Below, piece after piece: positions 34,600 to 55,663 of a stretch of 64,000 bases of DNA (position 1 is the stretch's first letter; the number at the start of each line of letters is the position of its first letter). A program made the translations under genes and the position numbers. A model generated the notes under the pieces. It was not told the origin of the DNA. It did not search any database and saw only the letters and a list, made by a program, of their open reading frames with translations. The stretch is taken from the IMG/VR virus record IMGVR_UViG_3300020202_000061, positions 1-64,000 of that record, one strand, 5' to 3'.

Positions 34600-36537
34600 T
34601 TATTTAGCCCATGCCATGTAATCACTGAAAGCTCGAAACTTCTGTTGAGCTTCCTGGGGGTTGTTCACGTAGAGTGCTTGGAGATATTCCCAGATCAGAT
34701 CGAAGATCACTTTTGGTTTCACCTGGAGCTTACTCTCCTGATAGGCGTCATGAAGATCACTAGAAACTGCCGCTAGAATCTGATCGATTTTGCGTGCTCC
34801 GAAGAACTGTTGGATCATGGTCAGGGCGATTCCGGACTTCCTGGTGTATTGGTCGATCTGCGGGATGATCGGTTTGATCTTCTCACGATATGCAATGTAG
34901 TTCCGGAGCATCTTGTAGGTCTCCGGATATACGCGAAGAGTGTTTAGCAGACCCTGGAGAATCGGCTCTGGCATCTTATCATAATTGGTTACGACCGGTT
35001 CCAGGGCATGGGCTGGATTGTTGTCGATGTCTTTGATCTTCTTCATAACAATCTGAATTCCAGCCTGAGTGAGCTTCTTCCGGAATTGCTTGTCCGCGTT
35101 CATTCCAAACCGGAGCAATCCGATGATGGCCCGCACCGCATATTTGTTGACCCAATACCCGGAGGACCGAAGCACATTCAGGATGCGTTGCTGAATCCAT
35201 CCGGGTAGACGAGAGATCACCTGCTTCTCATCACGAGTGAATTCCTCACCCCAGCGATCCTGTTCCACATCTTGTTCTGGTCGGATCAGATTGAAAATCT
35301 TCTTCATGTAGGTATCGACATGAAGGTCCGGCGATGCACCTAAAATCACGGCGAAGCAGAACTGGAACAGGGTGCGTTTGATCTCGTCAAAACGACGCTC
35401 ATACTTGTCGTTGCCCCAGACACGAAACTCGATACGACCCTGGTGATCGCGAAATCCACTGATATTGAAGGTGCTGTATTTCTCAGCCTCTTGCGTGAAC
35501 ATGTCACGCATGGGCTGAACCAGCTTGGTAAACCCATCCTGACGAATGATCCGGGCAATGGCCCGGCTCGATTCACCACCGATCTTGGCTATCTGGTCCC
35601 GGAAATACTGACGAATTCGATCCAGAGGAGTCTGCGTGTAAGTGGATTTGCGACGGTCGAAATCCGAGAGCACACGTTCGTCACCCATGAACAGTGCAAC
35701 CTTGAACCAATCGATGTCCTCAAGCTGTTTGGGTTGTTTGAAACTGACCCGAATATGCAGGCCGGTATTGCTGTTGGTGTAGCCAGTTCGATCAATGAAC
35801 CGAAACATCTTCTCCAACCACTCCAGACCCTCTTGCATGTCCATCGCCGGAGATGAAATCTCAGCACCGCCTCGTGGATTATCCGAATCGTCAACCGTGC
35901 TATCAGCCATGACACGCCACACCGCACTTTGATGTCCGGGAATCTTCGCGTATTCACGTTCCTGATAAAGTTTAACTCCAAACTGTTCTTGGAAATCCTG
36001 AGCGAGCTTCCCGAAGATTTCACGTTGAGGTGGAAACACAGTGATATAATGACCATCCTCATCCTGCTGCACCGCATGCCTGAACGAGTAGCGGAAGTTA
36101 TTCAGGACCCATTCCGATCCTTTGATCCTCAACAAGGCGTGGGAAAGACCCATCATGTCGAGCCTATCCAGAATCAACATCAGATAAGGAAGATCACGAG
36201 CCCTCTCACCCCGCTTGATATTACCGAGCATATCCAGGTTGATTGGTTGCAAACCCAGGTTCTGATGAGAATTGTATTCCTGAACGAACTGATCCCAGTT
36301 ATGGATCAGGGAACGAGCGACCTCAAGCAGGGCAGACCCACCCTTCAACTCAATCAGGTCGAGGAGTTTGTCCCAATCCTTCAACCGAACTCGCTTGAAC
36401 CGGTAATGATTCGCACCACGCTCGTAATAGAACTCGACCTCGAAACCCATGCGGAACCAAGCCAGGATATTCGTGACATCCTTCCGGCTTAATTTGGCTC
36501 CCTCATAGAGCGGGGCAAGAAATTCGACAAGACGCAT
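34600..36537 (-). CDS. Putative amidoligase (COOH-NH2 ligase) domain protein, late, with MRLVEFLAPLYE leader
   Basis: MGFEVEF, WRVMADSTV, GAEISSP, TNSNTGLHI, KYSTFN, IEFRVWG; TAAATA at 36560. Confidence 0.75.
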   Translation of the reverse strand: MRLVEFLAPLYEGAKLSRKDVTNILAWFRMGFEVEFYYERGANHYRFKRVRLKDWDKLLDLIELKGGSALLEVARSLIHNWDQFVQEYNSHQNLGLQPINLDMLGNIKRGERARDLPYLMLILDRLDMMGLSHALLRIKGSEWVLNNFRYSFRHAVQQDEDGHYITVFPPQREIFGKLAQDFQEQFGVKLYQEREYAKIPGHQSAVWRVMADSTVDDSDNPRGGAEISSPAMDMQEGLEWLEKMFRFIDRTGYTNSNTGLHIRVSFKQPKQLEDIDWFKVALFMGDERVLSDFDRRKSTYTQTPLDRIRQYFRDQIAKIGGESSRAIARIIRQDGFTKLVQPMRDMFTQEAEKYSTFNISGFRDHQGRIEFRVWGNDKYERRFDEIKRTLFQFCFAVILGASPDLHVDTYMKKIFNLIRPEQDVEQDRWGEEFTRDEKQVISRLPGWIQQRILNVLRSSGYWVNKYAVRAIIGLLRFGMNADKQFRKKLTQAGIQIVMKKIKDIDNNPAHALEPVVTNYDKMPEPILQGLLNTLRVYPETYKMLRNYIAYREKIKPIIPQIDQYTRKSGIALTMIQQFFGARKIDQILAAVSSDLHDAYQESKLQVKPKVIFDLIWEYLQALYVNNPQEAQQKFRAFSDYMAWAK

Positions 36538-47201: not shown

Positions 47202-48260
47202 TTAACGAAAATATCTGGTCCAAACGTGGCGAGATTTTCTGTTGTATTCGAGCAGTCCGTGGAGGCTGGGGTTCCAGCAAGGAATCCAATTCTGAACGAA
47301 CCACGCGAGGCTCATACGACCAAGAATGCCCCAGAACCGAGTGGGCTCGGCCTTGAACCAGGAACTGGCCCACTGAATCTCAGAACTCACCACGACCGGC
47401 ACGCCCTGGCTAACAAAGTCGGCGGCCGTGATGTTGAAGCTCTCGGAGAAGCTTACCTGGAGTCCCATGTCCATGTGACGAACCAGCTTGAGAAACTCCT
47501 CATGATCAAGCCAATCATGCTCAACCAATTTGCTATCGGGAGTCGCTGCAAACAACGCACGGAGGTTCTTCAGAATAGGTTCACCACGACCCTCAACGCG
47601 ACCCACATTGATGTGGAAGTGAAGCGGCTTACCCAGAAGTCTCGCGAATTTAATCGCGGCCATTGCCTGCATCAGATGGTTCTTGAGTGGACGAATCGCC
47701 CCGAAGCAACCGATGTCGATGTGTTTGGTCTCGCGGTGCTTGCGGGGCTTCTTCGTCACCGGATAGTAATTGGGCAGGTAGACCACACGTTGATCAACCT
47801 CAGCACACCGCATACCCAGGGTGTCTTGAGCGAGGAATCTGATCTCCTCATTGGTACGTTCGGAGTTCCGTGACACCACCACGTTCGGACGTTTCAGATA
47901 TTCCACGATCCAATTCATCACGTTGCCCTCGTTGGCGAGGAACGGAATCTCCGAATGATTGCGGATAATCCAGGTCACGTCTGGATGCAACTTGGTGAGG
48001 ATGTCAAACTTCTCCGGCACTACCCAGAATGCCTCGATGATCACGTGGGTCGGCTTGTATTGGGAGACCTCGCGGTCGATCCGATTGTTGTCCACGACCT
48101 GGACCAGCTTAGACTCGATGCCATTTCGTACGAGCATGTCATTGACGAATCGAGCCGAATTGAAAAGGCCCGAACTCAAATGGATCGCCGTCTCTCCCTG
48201 ATAGGAGTGACGCAGCTTCAAAATGAACAGAACACGCTTTTTCACGGGCAAACTTCTCAA
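47202..48260 (-). CDS. Glycosyltransferase (GT-B, GT4-like), late
   Basis: GCFGAIRPLKN, QVSFSESFNITAAD..GVPVV; TAAATA at 48273. Confidence 0.75.
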   Translation of the reverse strand: MRSLPVKKRVLFILKLRHSYQGETAIHLSSGLFNSARFVNDMLVRNGIESKLVQVVDNNRIDREVSQYKPTHVIIEAFWVVPEKFDILTKLHPDVTWIIRNHSEIPFLANEGNVMNWIVEYLKRPNVVVSRNSERTNEEIRFLAQDTLGMRCAEVDQRVVYLPNYYPVTKKPRKHRETKHIDIGCFGAIRPLKNHLMQAMAAIKFARLLGKPLHFHINVGRVEGRGEPILKNLRALFAATPDSKLVEHDWLDHEEFLKLVRHMDMGLQVSFSESFNITAADFVSQGVPVVVSSEIQWASSWFKAEPTRFWGILGRMSLAWFVQNWIPCWNPSLHGLLEYNRKSRHVWTRYFR

Positions 48261-54065: not shown

Positions 54066-54110
54066 CAGGGTCTCCTGGTAAACCACAAGTATATGGGGAA
54101 ACCACAGGAA

Positions 54111-54142
54111 AAGTAAAGGGGCCAGACCGAAGCCTGACCCCT
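54111..54142 (-). terminator. Intrinsic terminator
   Basis: AGGGGTCAGGC-TTCG-GTCTGGCCCCT-TTACTT on the minus strand. Confidence 0.75.
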
Positions 54143-54168
54143 GCGTTACCCTCCGAAGGCAATCTTAC

Positions 54169-54438
54169 TTAGGGATGATACTCGCGTTCCCTCATGGTTT
54201 CGAAGACGTAGACGTTTCGCGGTGTCACCACGATCTGAAGAAGCGCTGCGATAGCCGCACTCTCGGCCTCATCCAGAGCATAATCATAGAGGGGTGGATT
54301 ATCCGGGATATTCCCAACACGGATCGCTTCCTGAAGCTTATCCTCAGGAATTAACACGTCCCGGAGGAATCGACCAGCCCCGTTGTATTCGGCAAACCAA
54401 TACTCGATTCGTTGTCCAAGCACTTCCATCGGAACCAC
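54169..54438 (-). CDS. Hypothetical protein
   Basis: 89 aa ORF between two terminators. Confidence 0.55.
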   Translation of the reverse strand: MVPMEVLGQRIEYWFAEYNGAGRFLRDVLIPEDKLQEAIRVGNIPDNPPLYDYALDEAESAAIAALLQIVVTPRNVYVFETMREREYHP

Positions 54439-54444
54439 CCTAGA

Positions 54445-54567
54445 ATAAACCCCAGGGGTTTCCCCCTGGGGCCTAGACCGGGTTCGCCCCGGCCGGAGAT
54501 GACTGCTCTCTCAATCGTCAAGTTCTAGTCCATGCCCTTAAGAGAGGGGCATCGGGTTTGAACTTCC
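54445..54567 (-). ncRNA. Candidate structured RNA with complementary loops, ending in an intrinsic terminator
   Basis: Promoter TTGACA-N16-TAATAT (54599-54572); three stems; loops CUCUCUUAA and UUGAGAGAG; terminator CCCCAGGGG-GAAA-CCCCUGGGG-UUUAUU. Confidence 0.6.
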
Positions 54568-54595
54568 AGGAATATTAGGGTATTCCCGGAATTTG

Positions 54596-55663
54596 TCAAG
54601 CACCAATACCCTTGTCCTGAATGAATTGTTTTGTCGCCAACCACCAGGGTCTGTTGTAGTCGAACTGTGGTGATCCACTGGCCATCGTCCAGATGACGAT
54701 TCCGTCAGCAGCACCACCATTGGCAGTGAGATCATCGAAGCCGACGCGCAACATCTCGTACCACGCCTCATATCCGAACTGACCCGCCGGAGCGTGAATA
54801 TCCTCGGCTACCCTCTTGTGCGGAGTATAGACCGGATAGCACGGAATCGACGGACGCAGACGACGGCACTCCGAGATCATGTCCTTGCAATAACGAGCCC
54901 AGCTATTCTGGGCATTAGCCGTGGACGGCGTATTCACATCCTGTGCGGTCACGTTGTCGTCGTGATGATCCACAAGGGAATAGACGGACGGGCAGAAGAA
55001 ATCCACCGCGTTCGCAATCCGCATCAACGCGTTGTTCTTTGCCTGCCACGTTGCGGTACGTGCCGCGACATCCGTATTGAGATGGTTGAGACTACGGATC
55101 GGAACCTCACCGTAATAACCGATCTTCAGACCGGGCCAATCCGTGCGGAAGCAATCCAACACGTCCAGATGGTACTGGATATTCTGCTGCAACACGGTAC
55201 CGGTCGTGTCCTGAAGCTTCCAATGTTCGATATCGATGATGAGATGTGTCAGACCAGGATTCTGATTCTTCCACTTCGGAATCATCGTGTTCTTGATGTA
55301 GGTCTTGTTCGGAACTGAATGATCCGAGGTCGGCCAAAACTCTGACTCGTAGGCGATCTTAAACTTGCGTAGACCAAACCGAGTGAGGTCTGGGCTTCCA
55401 GGAAAACGCATCGAATCATAAATCTTGAAACGACCCTTGCGGGTGAGCGCCTTGAGTTCGGCGATGAGTGCATTCGCCGATGCAAGATTAGCCGTCAGTG
55501 TGGCATTGGCCGTGACGAGCGAACTGTTCTGTGTGGTCAGTGCAGTGTTCTGCGCGGTAAGTGTCCCAATCTGGGTCTGTGCCGCATTCAAGTTGATTTG
55601 GAATTGCGTGTAATCGGCATCAACCAAAGCCAATAGTGCACGAATATCATCAGTGTGACTCAT
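54596..55663 (-). CDS. Coiled-coil + glycoside hydrolase-like TIM barrel (hyaluronidase GH56-like motifs), late
   Basis: Heptad N-terminus; IIDIEHW, KIGYYG, DFFCPSVY, DGIVIW; TAAATA at 55703. Confidence 0.6.
   Translation of the reverse strand: MSHTDDIRALLALVDADYTQFQINLNAAQTQIGTLTAQNTALTTQNSSLVTANATLTANLASANALIAELKALTRKGRFKIYDSMRFPGSPDLTRFGLRKFKIAYESEFWPTSDHSVPNKTYIKNTMIPKWKNQNPGLTHLIIDIEHWKLQDTTGTVLQQNIQYHLDVLDCFRTDWPGLKIGYYGEVPIRSLNHLNTDVAARTATWQAKNNALMRIANAVDFFCPSVYSLVDHHDDNVTAQDVNTPSTANAQNSWARYCKDMISECRRLRPSIPCYPVYTPHKRVAEDIHAPAGQFGYEAWYEMLRVGFDDLTANGGAADGIVIWTMASGSPQFDYNRPWWLATKQFIQDKGIGA

What the first reader, a model, noticed from the sequence alone, without database searches (positions are those of the whole stretch)
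54445..54599. Self-contained structured RNA with a 9-bp loop-loop complement, between a sigma70 promoter and a terminator
Seen on the minus strand: TTGACA-N16-TAATAT, then AAGUUC..AUGCCC[CUCUCUUAA]GGGCAU..GAACUU, UGAC[GAUUGAGAGAGCA]GUCA, GGCCGGG[GCGAA]CCCGGUC, and CCCCAGGGG[GAAA]CCCCUGGGG-UUUAUU. Loop 1 (CUCUCUUAA) pairs with loop 2 (UUGAGAGAG) over 9 bp with one G-U. There is no convincing ORF, and I do not recognise a known riboswitch or ribozyme core. Inference: either a stand-alone small RNA (intramolecular kissing loop, hand-in-hand oligomer as in phi29 pRNA, or antitoxin/decoy RNA), or an attenuator for the 54438 gene, since CCGGGGC could also pair with the terminator 5' arm.
Basis: partly seen in the sequence, partly recalled or inferred. 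Interest (0 to 1): 0.72.

Follow-up and report, generated by a model that had tools for sequence, protein, structure and literature searches.

The report
Conserved structured leader RNA in jumbo phages
A roughly 120-nucleotide folded RNA, with its own promoter and terminator, sits in front of a small immunity-protein-like gene in a few uncultured giant soil and wastewater phages; it is real and matches no described RNA family, but its job is unknown and the long loop-loop pairing that drew attention is mostly specific to this one genome.

Summary
The element exists as described, on the minus strand of a 347.5-kb jumbo-phage contig from a soil metagenome. It consists of a sigma70-type promoter, four hairpins and a terminator hairpin with a U-tract, followed 20 nt later by the start of an 86-codon gene.

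I found five further sequence variants on metagenome contigs, plus a partial one. All lie directly upstream of the same 86-aa gene.
- **Promoter:** the hexamers are kept while the spacer varies.
- **Stems P4 and P5 (terminator):** both show compensatory changes, and 98% of base-pair cells are paired against 23-57% in slid controls. G-U pairs fix the strand.
- **Core:** a 38-nt stretch is almost invariant.

The advertised 9-bp loop-loop complement is not conserved. Only CUCUC/GAGAG (5 bp) survives, without covariation, and the geometry is awkward for an intramolecular kiss.

No Rfam family matches. A 15-bit LOOT hit is chance. I found no conserved antiterminator, no conserved Shine-Dalgarno (SD) sequestration, no repeats and no phage mRNA target.

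The downstream protein has a colicin-E3/pyocin-S6 immunity-like (DUF7683-like) fold.

Best reading: a leaky-terminator leader that yields a short structured RNA plus some read-through mRNA. This makes it a new RNA family of a kind already seen in giant phages (5'UTR-derived sRNAs). Its function is unresolved.

The parts
54594..54599 (-). -35 hexamer TTGACA. It overlaps the stop codon of the upstream 355-aa gene.
   Evidence: Kept in 5 of 6 variants (TTGAAA in L021) and in the partial X4 variant.
54572..54577 (-). -10 hexamer TAATAT, 16-nt spacer. Predicted start near A54565, which is the first base of P1.
   Evidence: ATAT is invariant while the spacer varies. The start site is inferred from spacing and was not measured.
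54561..54594 (.). 14-nt inverted repeat (two TTCCNGGAA-like palindromes) bracketing the -10. Possible operator.
   Evidence: I1. It is only partly kept in relatives, judged by eye. Function is inferred.
54520..54565 (-). P1 (AAGUUC/GAACUU), a 4x4 internal loop (AAAC/ACUA), and P2 hairpin (CC-G-AUGCCC / GGGCAU-GG) with the 9-nt loop CUCUCUUAA (54538-54546).
   Evidence: P1 shows U-A to U-G changes. The P2 end pairs are invariant. The middle of P2 is partly compensated (A-U to G-C in L017; the stem is rebuilt in X4) but mismatched in L021/L022. Loop: CUCUC is invariant and the last 4 nt are variable.
54498..54519 (-). P3 hairpin GA-C-GAUUG[AGAGAG]CAGUC-A-UC. The loop can be read as A[GAGA]G.
   Evidence: It is invariant in all variants except the bulged C/G, so the pairing itself is untested.
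54494..54531 (-). Nearly invariant 38-nt core GGACUAG RR CUUGA S GAUUGAGAGAGCAGUCAUCUCCG.
   Evidence: only 3 of 38 columns vary in six variants. It is more conserved than the flanking coding DNA.
54476..54494 (-). P4 hairpin GGCCGGG[GCGAA]CCCGGUC. Pentaloop consensus is NNGAA.
   Evidence: Covariation: the pair 54493-54477 is G-U, U-A or C-G (A-U in X4). The pair 54490-54480 is G-C or C-G (C.A in two). In X4 the pair 54489-54481 is A-U.
54441..54471 (-). P5 intrinsic terminator CCCCAGGGG[GAAA]CCCCUGGGG plus UUUAUUCUA.
   Evidence: The loop is always GNRA (GAAA or GAGA). There is a G-C to A-U change in L021/L022 and a G-U in L017/L020. Hairpins of the same design end other genes of this genome.
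54169..54440 (-). SD GGGUGG (54435-54440) and an 86-codon gene (ATG at 54429). The product is acidic and has an Im3/DUF7683-like fold.
54088..54142 (-). Second terminator (UUCG loop, 54117-54142) and the next promoter (TTTACT-N18-TATACT). Together they close the one-gene unit.

Best explanation
This is a transcription unit of a giant phage, read by the host sigma70 RNA polymerase. A conserved promoter starts an RNA whose first base opens helix P1.

The RNA folds into four parts: a P1-internal loop-P2 arm, hairpin P3, hairpin P4, and a GC-rich GNRA-capped hairpin P5 with a U-tract. P5 has the same design as the terminators that end other genes in this genome.

Most transcripts therefore probably stop at P5 and give a stable structured RNA of about 115-125 nt. 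A minority read through and form the only mRNA for the 86-aa gene, whose start codon lies 20 nt further on. That gene is closed by a second terminator.

The working part of the RNA is the nearly invariant 38-nt core (the 3' side of the internal loop, the P1 3' strand, P3 and the UCUCC linker) together with the invariant CUCUC in the P2 loop. These are kept as sequence, not merely as pairs. I therefore infer that they are read by a partner (a protein, the polymerase or ribosome, or another RNA), or that they form a tertiary core. One example would be the A[GAGA]G loop of P3 docking on the P1/P2 internal loop, which lies at a matching height from the junction.

Shown: the conservation, the strand, the P4 and P5 pairing, and the linkage to the gene. 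Inferred: the transcription start, the terminator efficiency, and every statement about what the core binds.
For: - **Sequence and fold:**
- **Relatives:** six variants, all immediately upstream of the 86-aa gene, with the AUG at 137-138 nt from the P1 start in all six despite indels. This includes L021, where the upstream gene is unrelated, and L023/L024, where only its last third remains.
- **Promoter:** the hexamers are kept while the spacer varies.
- **Pairing:** 98.4% of base-pair cells are paired against 23-57% when partners are slid. In 0 of 500 shuffles was the covariation score or the paired fraction reached.
- **Compensatory changes:** seen in P4 and P5, plus an independent A-U replacement in a wastewater variant.
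- **Strand:** G-U pairs in P1, P3, P4 and P5 would be A.C on the other strand.
- **Core conservation:** the core is more conserved than neighbouring coding DNA.
- **Terminator design:** P5-type hairpins end other genes in this genome.
- **No promoter can fit** between P5 and the ATG.
- **Precedent:** of 11 sRNAs reported in giant phage 201phi2-1, 8 arise by premature termination in 5'UTRs (PMC11512511).
Against: - There are no transcript data. No RNA run holding the element was listed, and the two 'RNA-Seq' runs with a relative look like DNA and are held only as contigs.
- There are only six closely related variants, so the statistics are weak.
- P1, P2 and P3 have little or no true covariation.
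- Two apparently compensatory pairs in P5 are a one-base register shift of 9-bp against 8-bp stems.
- Other intergenic signals in these phages are also nearly invariant, so invariance alone does not prove an RNA-level function.
- No target or partner was identified.
Confidence: 0.5

Rival explanations
1. A riboswitch-like or factor-dependent attenuator. P1-P3 would bind a small molecule or protein, and this would set whether P5 terminates, so controlling the 86-aa gene in cis.
For: The order promoter, structured leader, terminator, SD, gene is the classic one. An invariant core with covarying outer helices is what aptamers look like. The gene has no other promoter.
Against: - There is no conserved antiterminator. 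In nascent-RNA folds the terminator 5' arm pairs with nothing in the window, with the GGG of P1 in three variants, and with UCUCC in two.
- P4, an independent stable hairpin, separates the core from P5.
- No known aptamer matches.
- The product is acidic, so autoregulation by RNA binding is unlikely.
Confidence: 0.17
2. A cis-acting processive antitermination RNA. This could be like HK022 put, which binds the polymerase, or like nut, with a boxA-like CUCUC(UUAA) and a boxB-like pentaloop hairpin P4. It would let polymerase that started at this promoter pass P5 and later terminators.
For: It lies directly after the start site and before two terminators. Strict sequence invariance fits a conserved host target. 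In the window, loop 1 resembles lambda boxA, and the P4 loops GCGAA and GAGAA fit a GNR(N)A pentaloop. The boxA and pentaloop comparisons rest on my own knowledge and not on a tool test.
Against: The boxA-like UUAA is specific to the window. Four variants have UAGAA, which cannot form a GNRA-like fold. No N- or Q-like gene was identified. A fresh promoter follows the second terminator, which argues against long read-through.
Confidence: 0.08
The P2 loop CUCUC would pair with the P3 loop GAGAG, either within one molecule or between molecules (as in phi29 pRNA), to build a compact fold or an oligomer.
For: Both partners are invariant in six variants. The pairing is 9 bp in the window (-9.8 kcal/mol).
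Against: The pairing beyond 5 bp is lost in every relative with no compensating change. The 5-bp core is worth only -4.9 kcal/mol. No covariation is possible because both partners are invariant. By my own geometric reasoning, the P2 loop sits about 16 stacked layers from the junction and the P3 loop about 7. The pRNA model of Rfam does not match.
Confidence: 0.07
4. An RNA partner of the protein. In a type III toxin-antitoxin-like or decoy arrangement, an abundant RNA and a scarce protein from one promoter would act on the same target, for example a host ribonuclease toxin.
For: The layout promoter, RNA, terminator, protein gene is that of ToxIN (my own knowledge). The protein has an rRNase-immunity-like fold. 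The RNA and the gene are never found apart.
Against: There are no tandem repeats. The protein resembles an inhibitor, not an endoribonuclease. The fold match is moderate (Z 6.3, TM 0.5-0.8) and has no sequence support. No similarity to rRNA target sites was established.
Confidence: 0.06
5. No dedicated RNA function. On this view the region holds only a promoter, DNA-level operator sites and a terminator for the upstream operon, and the hairpins are incidental.
For: Neighbouring promoter and terminator DNA is just as invariant. An operator-like palindrome overlaps the promoter.
Against: The terminator lies downstream of the promoter, not before it. There are compensatory changes in P4, which is not a terminator. 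The G-U pattern is strand-specific. The 38-nt invariant stretch contains no promoter-like site.
Confidence: 0.1

Closest known systems
5'UTR-derived small RNAs of giant phages made by premature termination (201phi2-1 sRNA005, phiKZ sRNA upstream of gp182; PMC11512511)
   Same: A start site followed within less than 250 nt by a terminator, just upstream of a protein gene. The sequence and predicted fold are conserved among related giant phages. The function is unknown.
   Different: The sequence and the gene context are unrelated (a small Im3-like gene, not a tail gene). Here the promoter is of the host sigma70 type. There are no transcript data for this element.
Transcription attenuators and riboswitch leaders
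   Same: The order promoter, structured leader, intrinsic terminator, SD, gene. A conserved core with covarying peripheral helices.
   Different: No conserved mutually exclusive antiterminator. An extra independent hairpin lies between the core and the terminator. No known aptamer matches.
LOOT RNA (Rfam RF03000)
   Same: A multi-hairpin environmental RNA with GNRA tetraloops. cmscan aligns the whole model to the window sequence.
   Different: The score is 15 bits against a gathering score of 46.4, with E = 1.7. Relative L017 gives no hit, and the family search of the whole genome finds nothing. This is a chance match.
   Same: A phage-encoded RNA of about 120 nt with two loops that are complementary to each other.
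   Different: No Rfam match. Only 5 bp are conserved. The context is not packaging. The phage type differs. Oligomerisation is untested.
Type III toxin-antitoxin loci (ToxIN)
   Same: Promoter, non-coding RNA, terminator and protein gene in one unit.
   Different: There are no tandem repeats. The protein is small, acidic and immunity-like, not a ToxN-type nuclease.
Lambda PR'-tR' 6S transcript, and put/nut antitermination RNAs
   Same: A short terminated transcript from a strong promoter just upstream of genes that need read-through.
   Different: No Q, N or put signature is conserved. A new promoter follows the next terminator.

Membership tests
Rfam LOOT (RF03000) | A covariance-model score at or above the gathering threshold of 46.4 bits. 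| tested here: not met
   15.0 bits, E = 1.7. No hit in the genome-wide family search.
Rfam LOOT (RF03000) | The match should be reproduced in homologous sequences. | tested here: not met
   L017 gives no LOOT hit. Its only hit is a chance NsiR1 terminator match at 16 bits.
Any Rfam 15 family (riboswitches, ribozymes, pRNA, 6S, tmRNA and others) | A match at the gathering score. | tested here: not met
   0 matches in the 64-kb window. Nothing else at E <= 10 in the element.
Sigma70-type promoter | -35 and -10 hexamers at 16-18 nt spacing, conserved as hexamers. | tested here: met
   TTGACA-16-TAATAT scores 10/12. The hexamers are kept and the spacer varies across six variants. Activity was not tested.
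Intrinsic (Rho-independent) terminator | A GC-rich hairpin directly followed by a U-tract, with the pairing maintained. | tested here: met
   A 9-bp stem, a GAAA loop and UUUAUUCUA. G-C to A-U and G-U changes keep the stem. The same design ends other genes. Efficiency was not measured.
Transcriptional riboswitch or attenuator | A conserved alternative (antiterminator) pairing that excludes the terminator. | tested here: not met
   Nascent-RNA folds of six variants give three different partners or none.
Transcriptional riboswitch or attenuator | Ligand-dependent structure or termination. | not testable with these tools
   Needs in-line probing or single-round transcription.
   The CUCUC/GAGAG partners are invariant, so no covariation is possible. 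The extra 4 bp in the window are lost in all relatives.
Type III toxin-antitoxin | Tandem direct repeats of the antitoxin RNA upstream of the terminator. | tested here: not met
   No tandem or direct repeats.
Base-pairing trans sRNA | A conserved single-stranded seed with a complementary target. | tested here: inconclusive
   Conserved candidate seeds exist. No translation-initiation region among my 456 crude ORF-based gene calls in the phage genome pairs better than with shuffled seeds. The host is unknown.
Colicin E3 / pyocin S6 immunity (Im3) and DUF7683, for the 86-aa product | Sequence-profile membership. | tested here: not met
   No Pfam hit even at E <= 1.
Colicin E3 / pyocin S6 immunity (Im3) and DUF7683, for the 86-aa product | The same fold over the whole domain. 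| tested here: met
   - 1e44_A is the top hit at Z 6.3, with 75 of 84 residues aligned.
- 3eip gives TM 0.51.
- DUF7683 gives TM 0.80 and pyocin S6 immunity TM 0.70.
- AFDB clusters give E = 2e-4 and TM 0.76.

This is moderate strength. A shared fold shows no function.

The most novel reading that the evidence does not exclude
The invariant core is a new RNA device, not a passive leader. It could be a compact tetraloop-receptor or pseudoknot fold that binds host polymerase, the ribosome or a host nuclease. It would be co-expressed from one promoter, in large excess, with an rRNase-immunity-like protein, giving a two-part RNA-plus-protein counter-defence cassette in giant phages.
Probability: 0.1. 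Interest if true: 0.8.

Novelty: new member of a known kind. Interest (0 to 1): 0.45.

Why it matters
Regulatory RNAs of giant phages are barely charted. Transcriptomics has begun to show many short RNAs made by early termination in 5'UTRs, and none has a known function. This element is a clean, comparatively supported example from uncultured soil and wastewater phages. It has a defined promoter, a terminator, two helices with covariation and a 38-nt invariant core. It is also strictly linked to a gene whose product looks like an inhibitor of ribosome-cutting toxins. That gives a concrete, small construct for asking what such phage leader RNAs do, and whether the RNA and the protein act together against a host system. 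As it stands, it is a new RNA family of modest reach (six variants) with no demonstrated function.

Tried and rejected
- **LOOT (RF03000):** rejected. 15 bits, and not reproduced in L017 or in the genome-wide search.
- **Second copies in the genome:** none. blastn and the covariance model R1 find only P5-like terminators.
- **Pattern scans:** the viral-contig pattern scans found only chance hits. The JGI metagenome scan found only the source contig. The GTDB genome scan found nothing.
- **Upstream protein in viral contigs:** a protein-based scan with the 355-aa protein confirmed no relative.
- **GenBank phages:** no DNA or protein match for the flanking genes. The next gene downstream has only distant (under 30% identity) relatives.
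- **Profile search of the 86-aa family:** one cluster only. The hits in very long proteins are repeat or bias artefacts.
- **Coding potential:** rejected. The 56-codon TTG frame and a 9-codon frame on the + strand are not conserved as protein.
- **Antiterminator:** rejected as a conserved feature.
- **UCUCC pairing with the SD:** suggested by RNAalifold, but it has probability 0.2-0.3 in three variants and is absent in three, so I did not adopt it.
- **Phage mRNA targets:** none beyond shuffled controls.
- **RNA-seq evidence:** no RNA run was listed for the element. Runs X3 and X4 gave only short contigs of a relative. These were useful as a seventh variant but not as expression data.
- **Self-correction:** I first thought the upstream gene differed in three relatives. 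In L023/L024 it is a truncated homolog. Only in L021 is it unrelated.

Full report
**Context.** The window is the first 64 kb of a 347.5-kb IMG/VR virus record, about 90% complete by CheckV. The source is a soil metagenome. The same protein set also occurs on a 401-kb contig. Genes around the finding all run on the minus strand and are small ORFs without Pfam families, which is typical of an accessory or early region of a jumbo phage.

**The observation.** Read on the minus strand, the region holds the following features, in order:
- TTGACA (54599-54594), a 16-nt spacer, then TAATAT (54577-54572). This is the best promoter-like site in 10 kb, at 10/12. The -35 overlaps the stop codon of the upstream 355-aa gene.
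- P1: AAGUUC (54565-54560) pairing with GAACUU (54525-54520).
- A 4x4 internal loop.
- P2 with the loop CUCUCUUAA.
- P3 around GAUUGAGAGAGCAGUC.
- P4: GGCCGGG[GCGAA]CCCGGUC.
- P5: CCCCAGGGG[GAAA]CCCCUGGGG followed by UUUAUUCUA.
- An SD (GGGUGG), then the ATG at 54429 of an 86-codon gene.

The 124-nt RNA folds at -61.7 kcal/mol, z = -4.5 against dinucleotide shuffles. The 9-nt loop complement is real in this sequence. There are no repeats and no conserved ORF.

**Relatives.** The element is single-copy in the genome. The flanking proteins led to metagenome contigs:
- L017, where the upstream protein is 83% identical.
- L020, L021, L022 (on a 409-kb JGI contig), L023 and L024, found through the 86-aa protein at 69-79% identity.

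Every one carries the element in the roughly 167-nt gap directly upstream of the 86-aa gene. This gives six distinct variants. Contigs from two wastewater runs add a partial seventh.

In L021 the upstream gene is unrelated. In L023/L024 only the last third of the 355-aa gene remains. The element therefore stays with the 86-aa gene. Pattern scans of IMG/VR, JGI metagenomes and GTDB genomes gave nothing further. A profile search of 1.8 billion representatives found only this one protein cluster.

**What is conserved.**
- **Promoter:** the hexamers are kept and the spacer varies. The partial variant also keeps TTGACA.
- **P1:** AGUUC/GRRCU, with U-A to U-G changes.
- **P2:** the outer CC/GG and inner CCC/GGG pairs are invariant. 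The middle is variable. It is partly compensated (A-U to G-C in L017, and a rebuilt perfect 7-bp stem in the wastewater variant) but mismatched (GCG/ACA) in L021/L022.
- **Loop 1:** CUCUC is invariant, followed by four variable bases.
- **Core (54531-54494):** three variable columns out of 38.
- **P4:** clear covariation.
  - The pair 54493-54477 occurs as G-U, U-A, C-G and A-U.
  - The pair 54490-54480 occurs as G-C and C-G (C.A in two).
  - The pair 54489-54481 occurs as G-C, G-U and, in the wastewater variant, A-U.
- **P5:** always has a GNRA loop, with G-C to A-U and G-U changes.

On the model-based alignment, 98.4% of cells pair against 23-57% in slid controls. No shuffle reaches the observed covariation score. 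Two "compensatory" pairs in P5 in that table are a register shift between 9-bp and 8-bp stems, and I do not count them. G-U pairs in four helices fix the strand as minus.

**The loop-loop pairing.** The 3' half of loop 1, which supplies four of the nine pairs, is the least conserved part of the RNA, while its partner never changes. In five of the six variants only CUCUC/GAGAG remains (-4.9 kcal/mol against -9.8 for the window's 9-mer).

A 5-bp Watson-Crick match between loops of these sizes has a chance of roughly 4%, by my own estimate. Its invariance is suggestive but could have other causes.

Geometry also argues against an intramolecular kiss. The P2 loop is about 16 stacked layers from the junction and the P3 loop about 7. 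P3's loop can instead be read as A[GAGA]G, a GNRA loop at the right height to dock on the P1/P2 internal loop. This is inference only.

GAUUG/CAGUC fits all of them but cannot be tested, because it never varies.

**Known families.** Rfam 15 gives no match at gathering scores. The only weak hit, LOOT at 15 bits over the full model, is not reproduced in L017 or in a genome-wide search. The covariance model R1 built here finds only P5-like terminators elsewhere in the genome. One of them lies 44 nt after a gene end. This supports P5 as an ordinary terminator of this phage.

**Mechanism.** There is no room for a promoter between P5 and the ATG, and a second conserved terminator plus a new promoter follow the gene. 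The gene is therefore a one-gene unit whose only access is through P5.

- I looked for a switch. Folding the nascent RNA without the terminator's 3' arm gives no common antiterminator.
- RNAalifold proposed UCUCC pairing with the SD, but partition-function folds support it only weakly, and only in half of the variants.
- No translation-initiation region among my crude ORF-based gene calls pairs with the conserved segments better than with shuffled seeds.

The simplest reading is a constitutive, leaky terminator that yields much short RNA and little mRNA. This is the arrangement reported for most sRNAs of giant phage 201phi2-1 (PMC11512511). What the invariant core recognises is unknown. Attenuation by a factor, put/nut-like antitermination, oligomerisation and a joint RNA-protein role remain possible, at lower probability.

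**The linked gene.** The 86-aa product is acidic and gives a confident model (pLDDT 83). Its fold repeatedly matches immunity proteins of ribosome-cutting bacteriocins:
- The colicin E3 immunity protein is the top hit by two aligners.
- "Pyocin S6 family immunity" and DUF7683 match in the ESM Atlas at TM 0.70-0.80.
- AlphaFold DB clusters match at E = 2e-4.

There is no sequence-level support, so this is a fold-level lead. An acidic inhibitor-like protein is unlikely to bind its own leader.

**Verdict.** The finding is a genuine, strand-specific, conserved structured RNA and a new RNA family. It belongs to a kind already seen in giant phages. The feature that made it look special, the 9-bp kissing complement, is largely an accident of this genome.

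Noticed in passing
window 54169-54429 (-): The 86-aa acidic protein has a confident AF2 model. Its fold matches the colicin E3 immunity protein, 'pyocin S6 family immunity' proteins and DUF7683. It has no Pfam hit by sequence. It could be an inhibitor of an rRNase-type toxin.
   Followed up: partly
window 54087-54168 (-): The intergenic region after the 86-aa gene is almost invariant in six relatives. It holds a small UUCG hairpin, a UUCG-loop terminator (54117-54142, with G-U to A-U changes) and a promoter TTTACT-N18-TATACT (54088-54117). It is more conserved than the coding DNA around it.
   Followed up: partly
window 54561-54594: A 14-nt inverted repeat made of two TTCCNGGAA-like palindromes brackets the -10 hexamer and the predicted start site. 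It is partly kept in relatives. It could be an operator, or a hairpin in read-through RNA from the upstream gene.
   Followed up: no
window 54596-55663 (-); L021, L023, L024: The upstream 355-aa ORFan is variable. Only its C-terminal third is present in L023/L024 (86% identity), and in L021 it is replaced by an unrelated 132-aa ORF. A 37%-identical homolog (L018) sits next to a DUF932 gene without the RNA.
   Followed up: partly
G000 64723-64746 (-), 129743-129764 (+), 188290-188311 (+): GC-rich terminators with GNRA loops, of the same design as P5, recur elsewhere in the genome. The one I read in detail (64723-64746) lies 44 nt after a gene end.
   Followed up: partly
L026 1428-1501 (+), which is G000 about 64636-64709, just beyond the window: ARAGORN calls a tRNA-like gene with an undetermined anticodon.
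   Followed up: no
whole record: The same proteins occur on a 401,308-nt contig elsewhere, and a relative lies on a 409,210-nt JGI contig. The true genome may therefore be larger than the 347.5-kb record.
   Followed up: no
window 34600-36537 (-) and 47202-48260 (-): A 645-aa protein has an Amidoligase_2 domain. A 352-aa protein has a weak match to a GT4 glycosyltransferase 'in conflict systems'.
   Followed up: no
alignment of six variants: The distance from the first base of P1 to the AUG is 137-138 nt in all six variants, despite several indels inside P4, P5 and the linkers.
   Followed up: no
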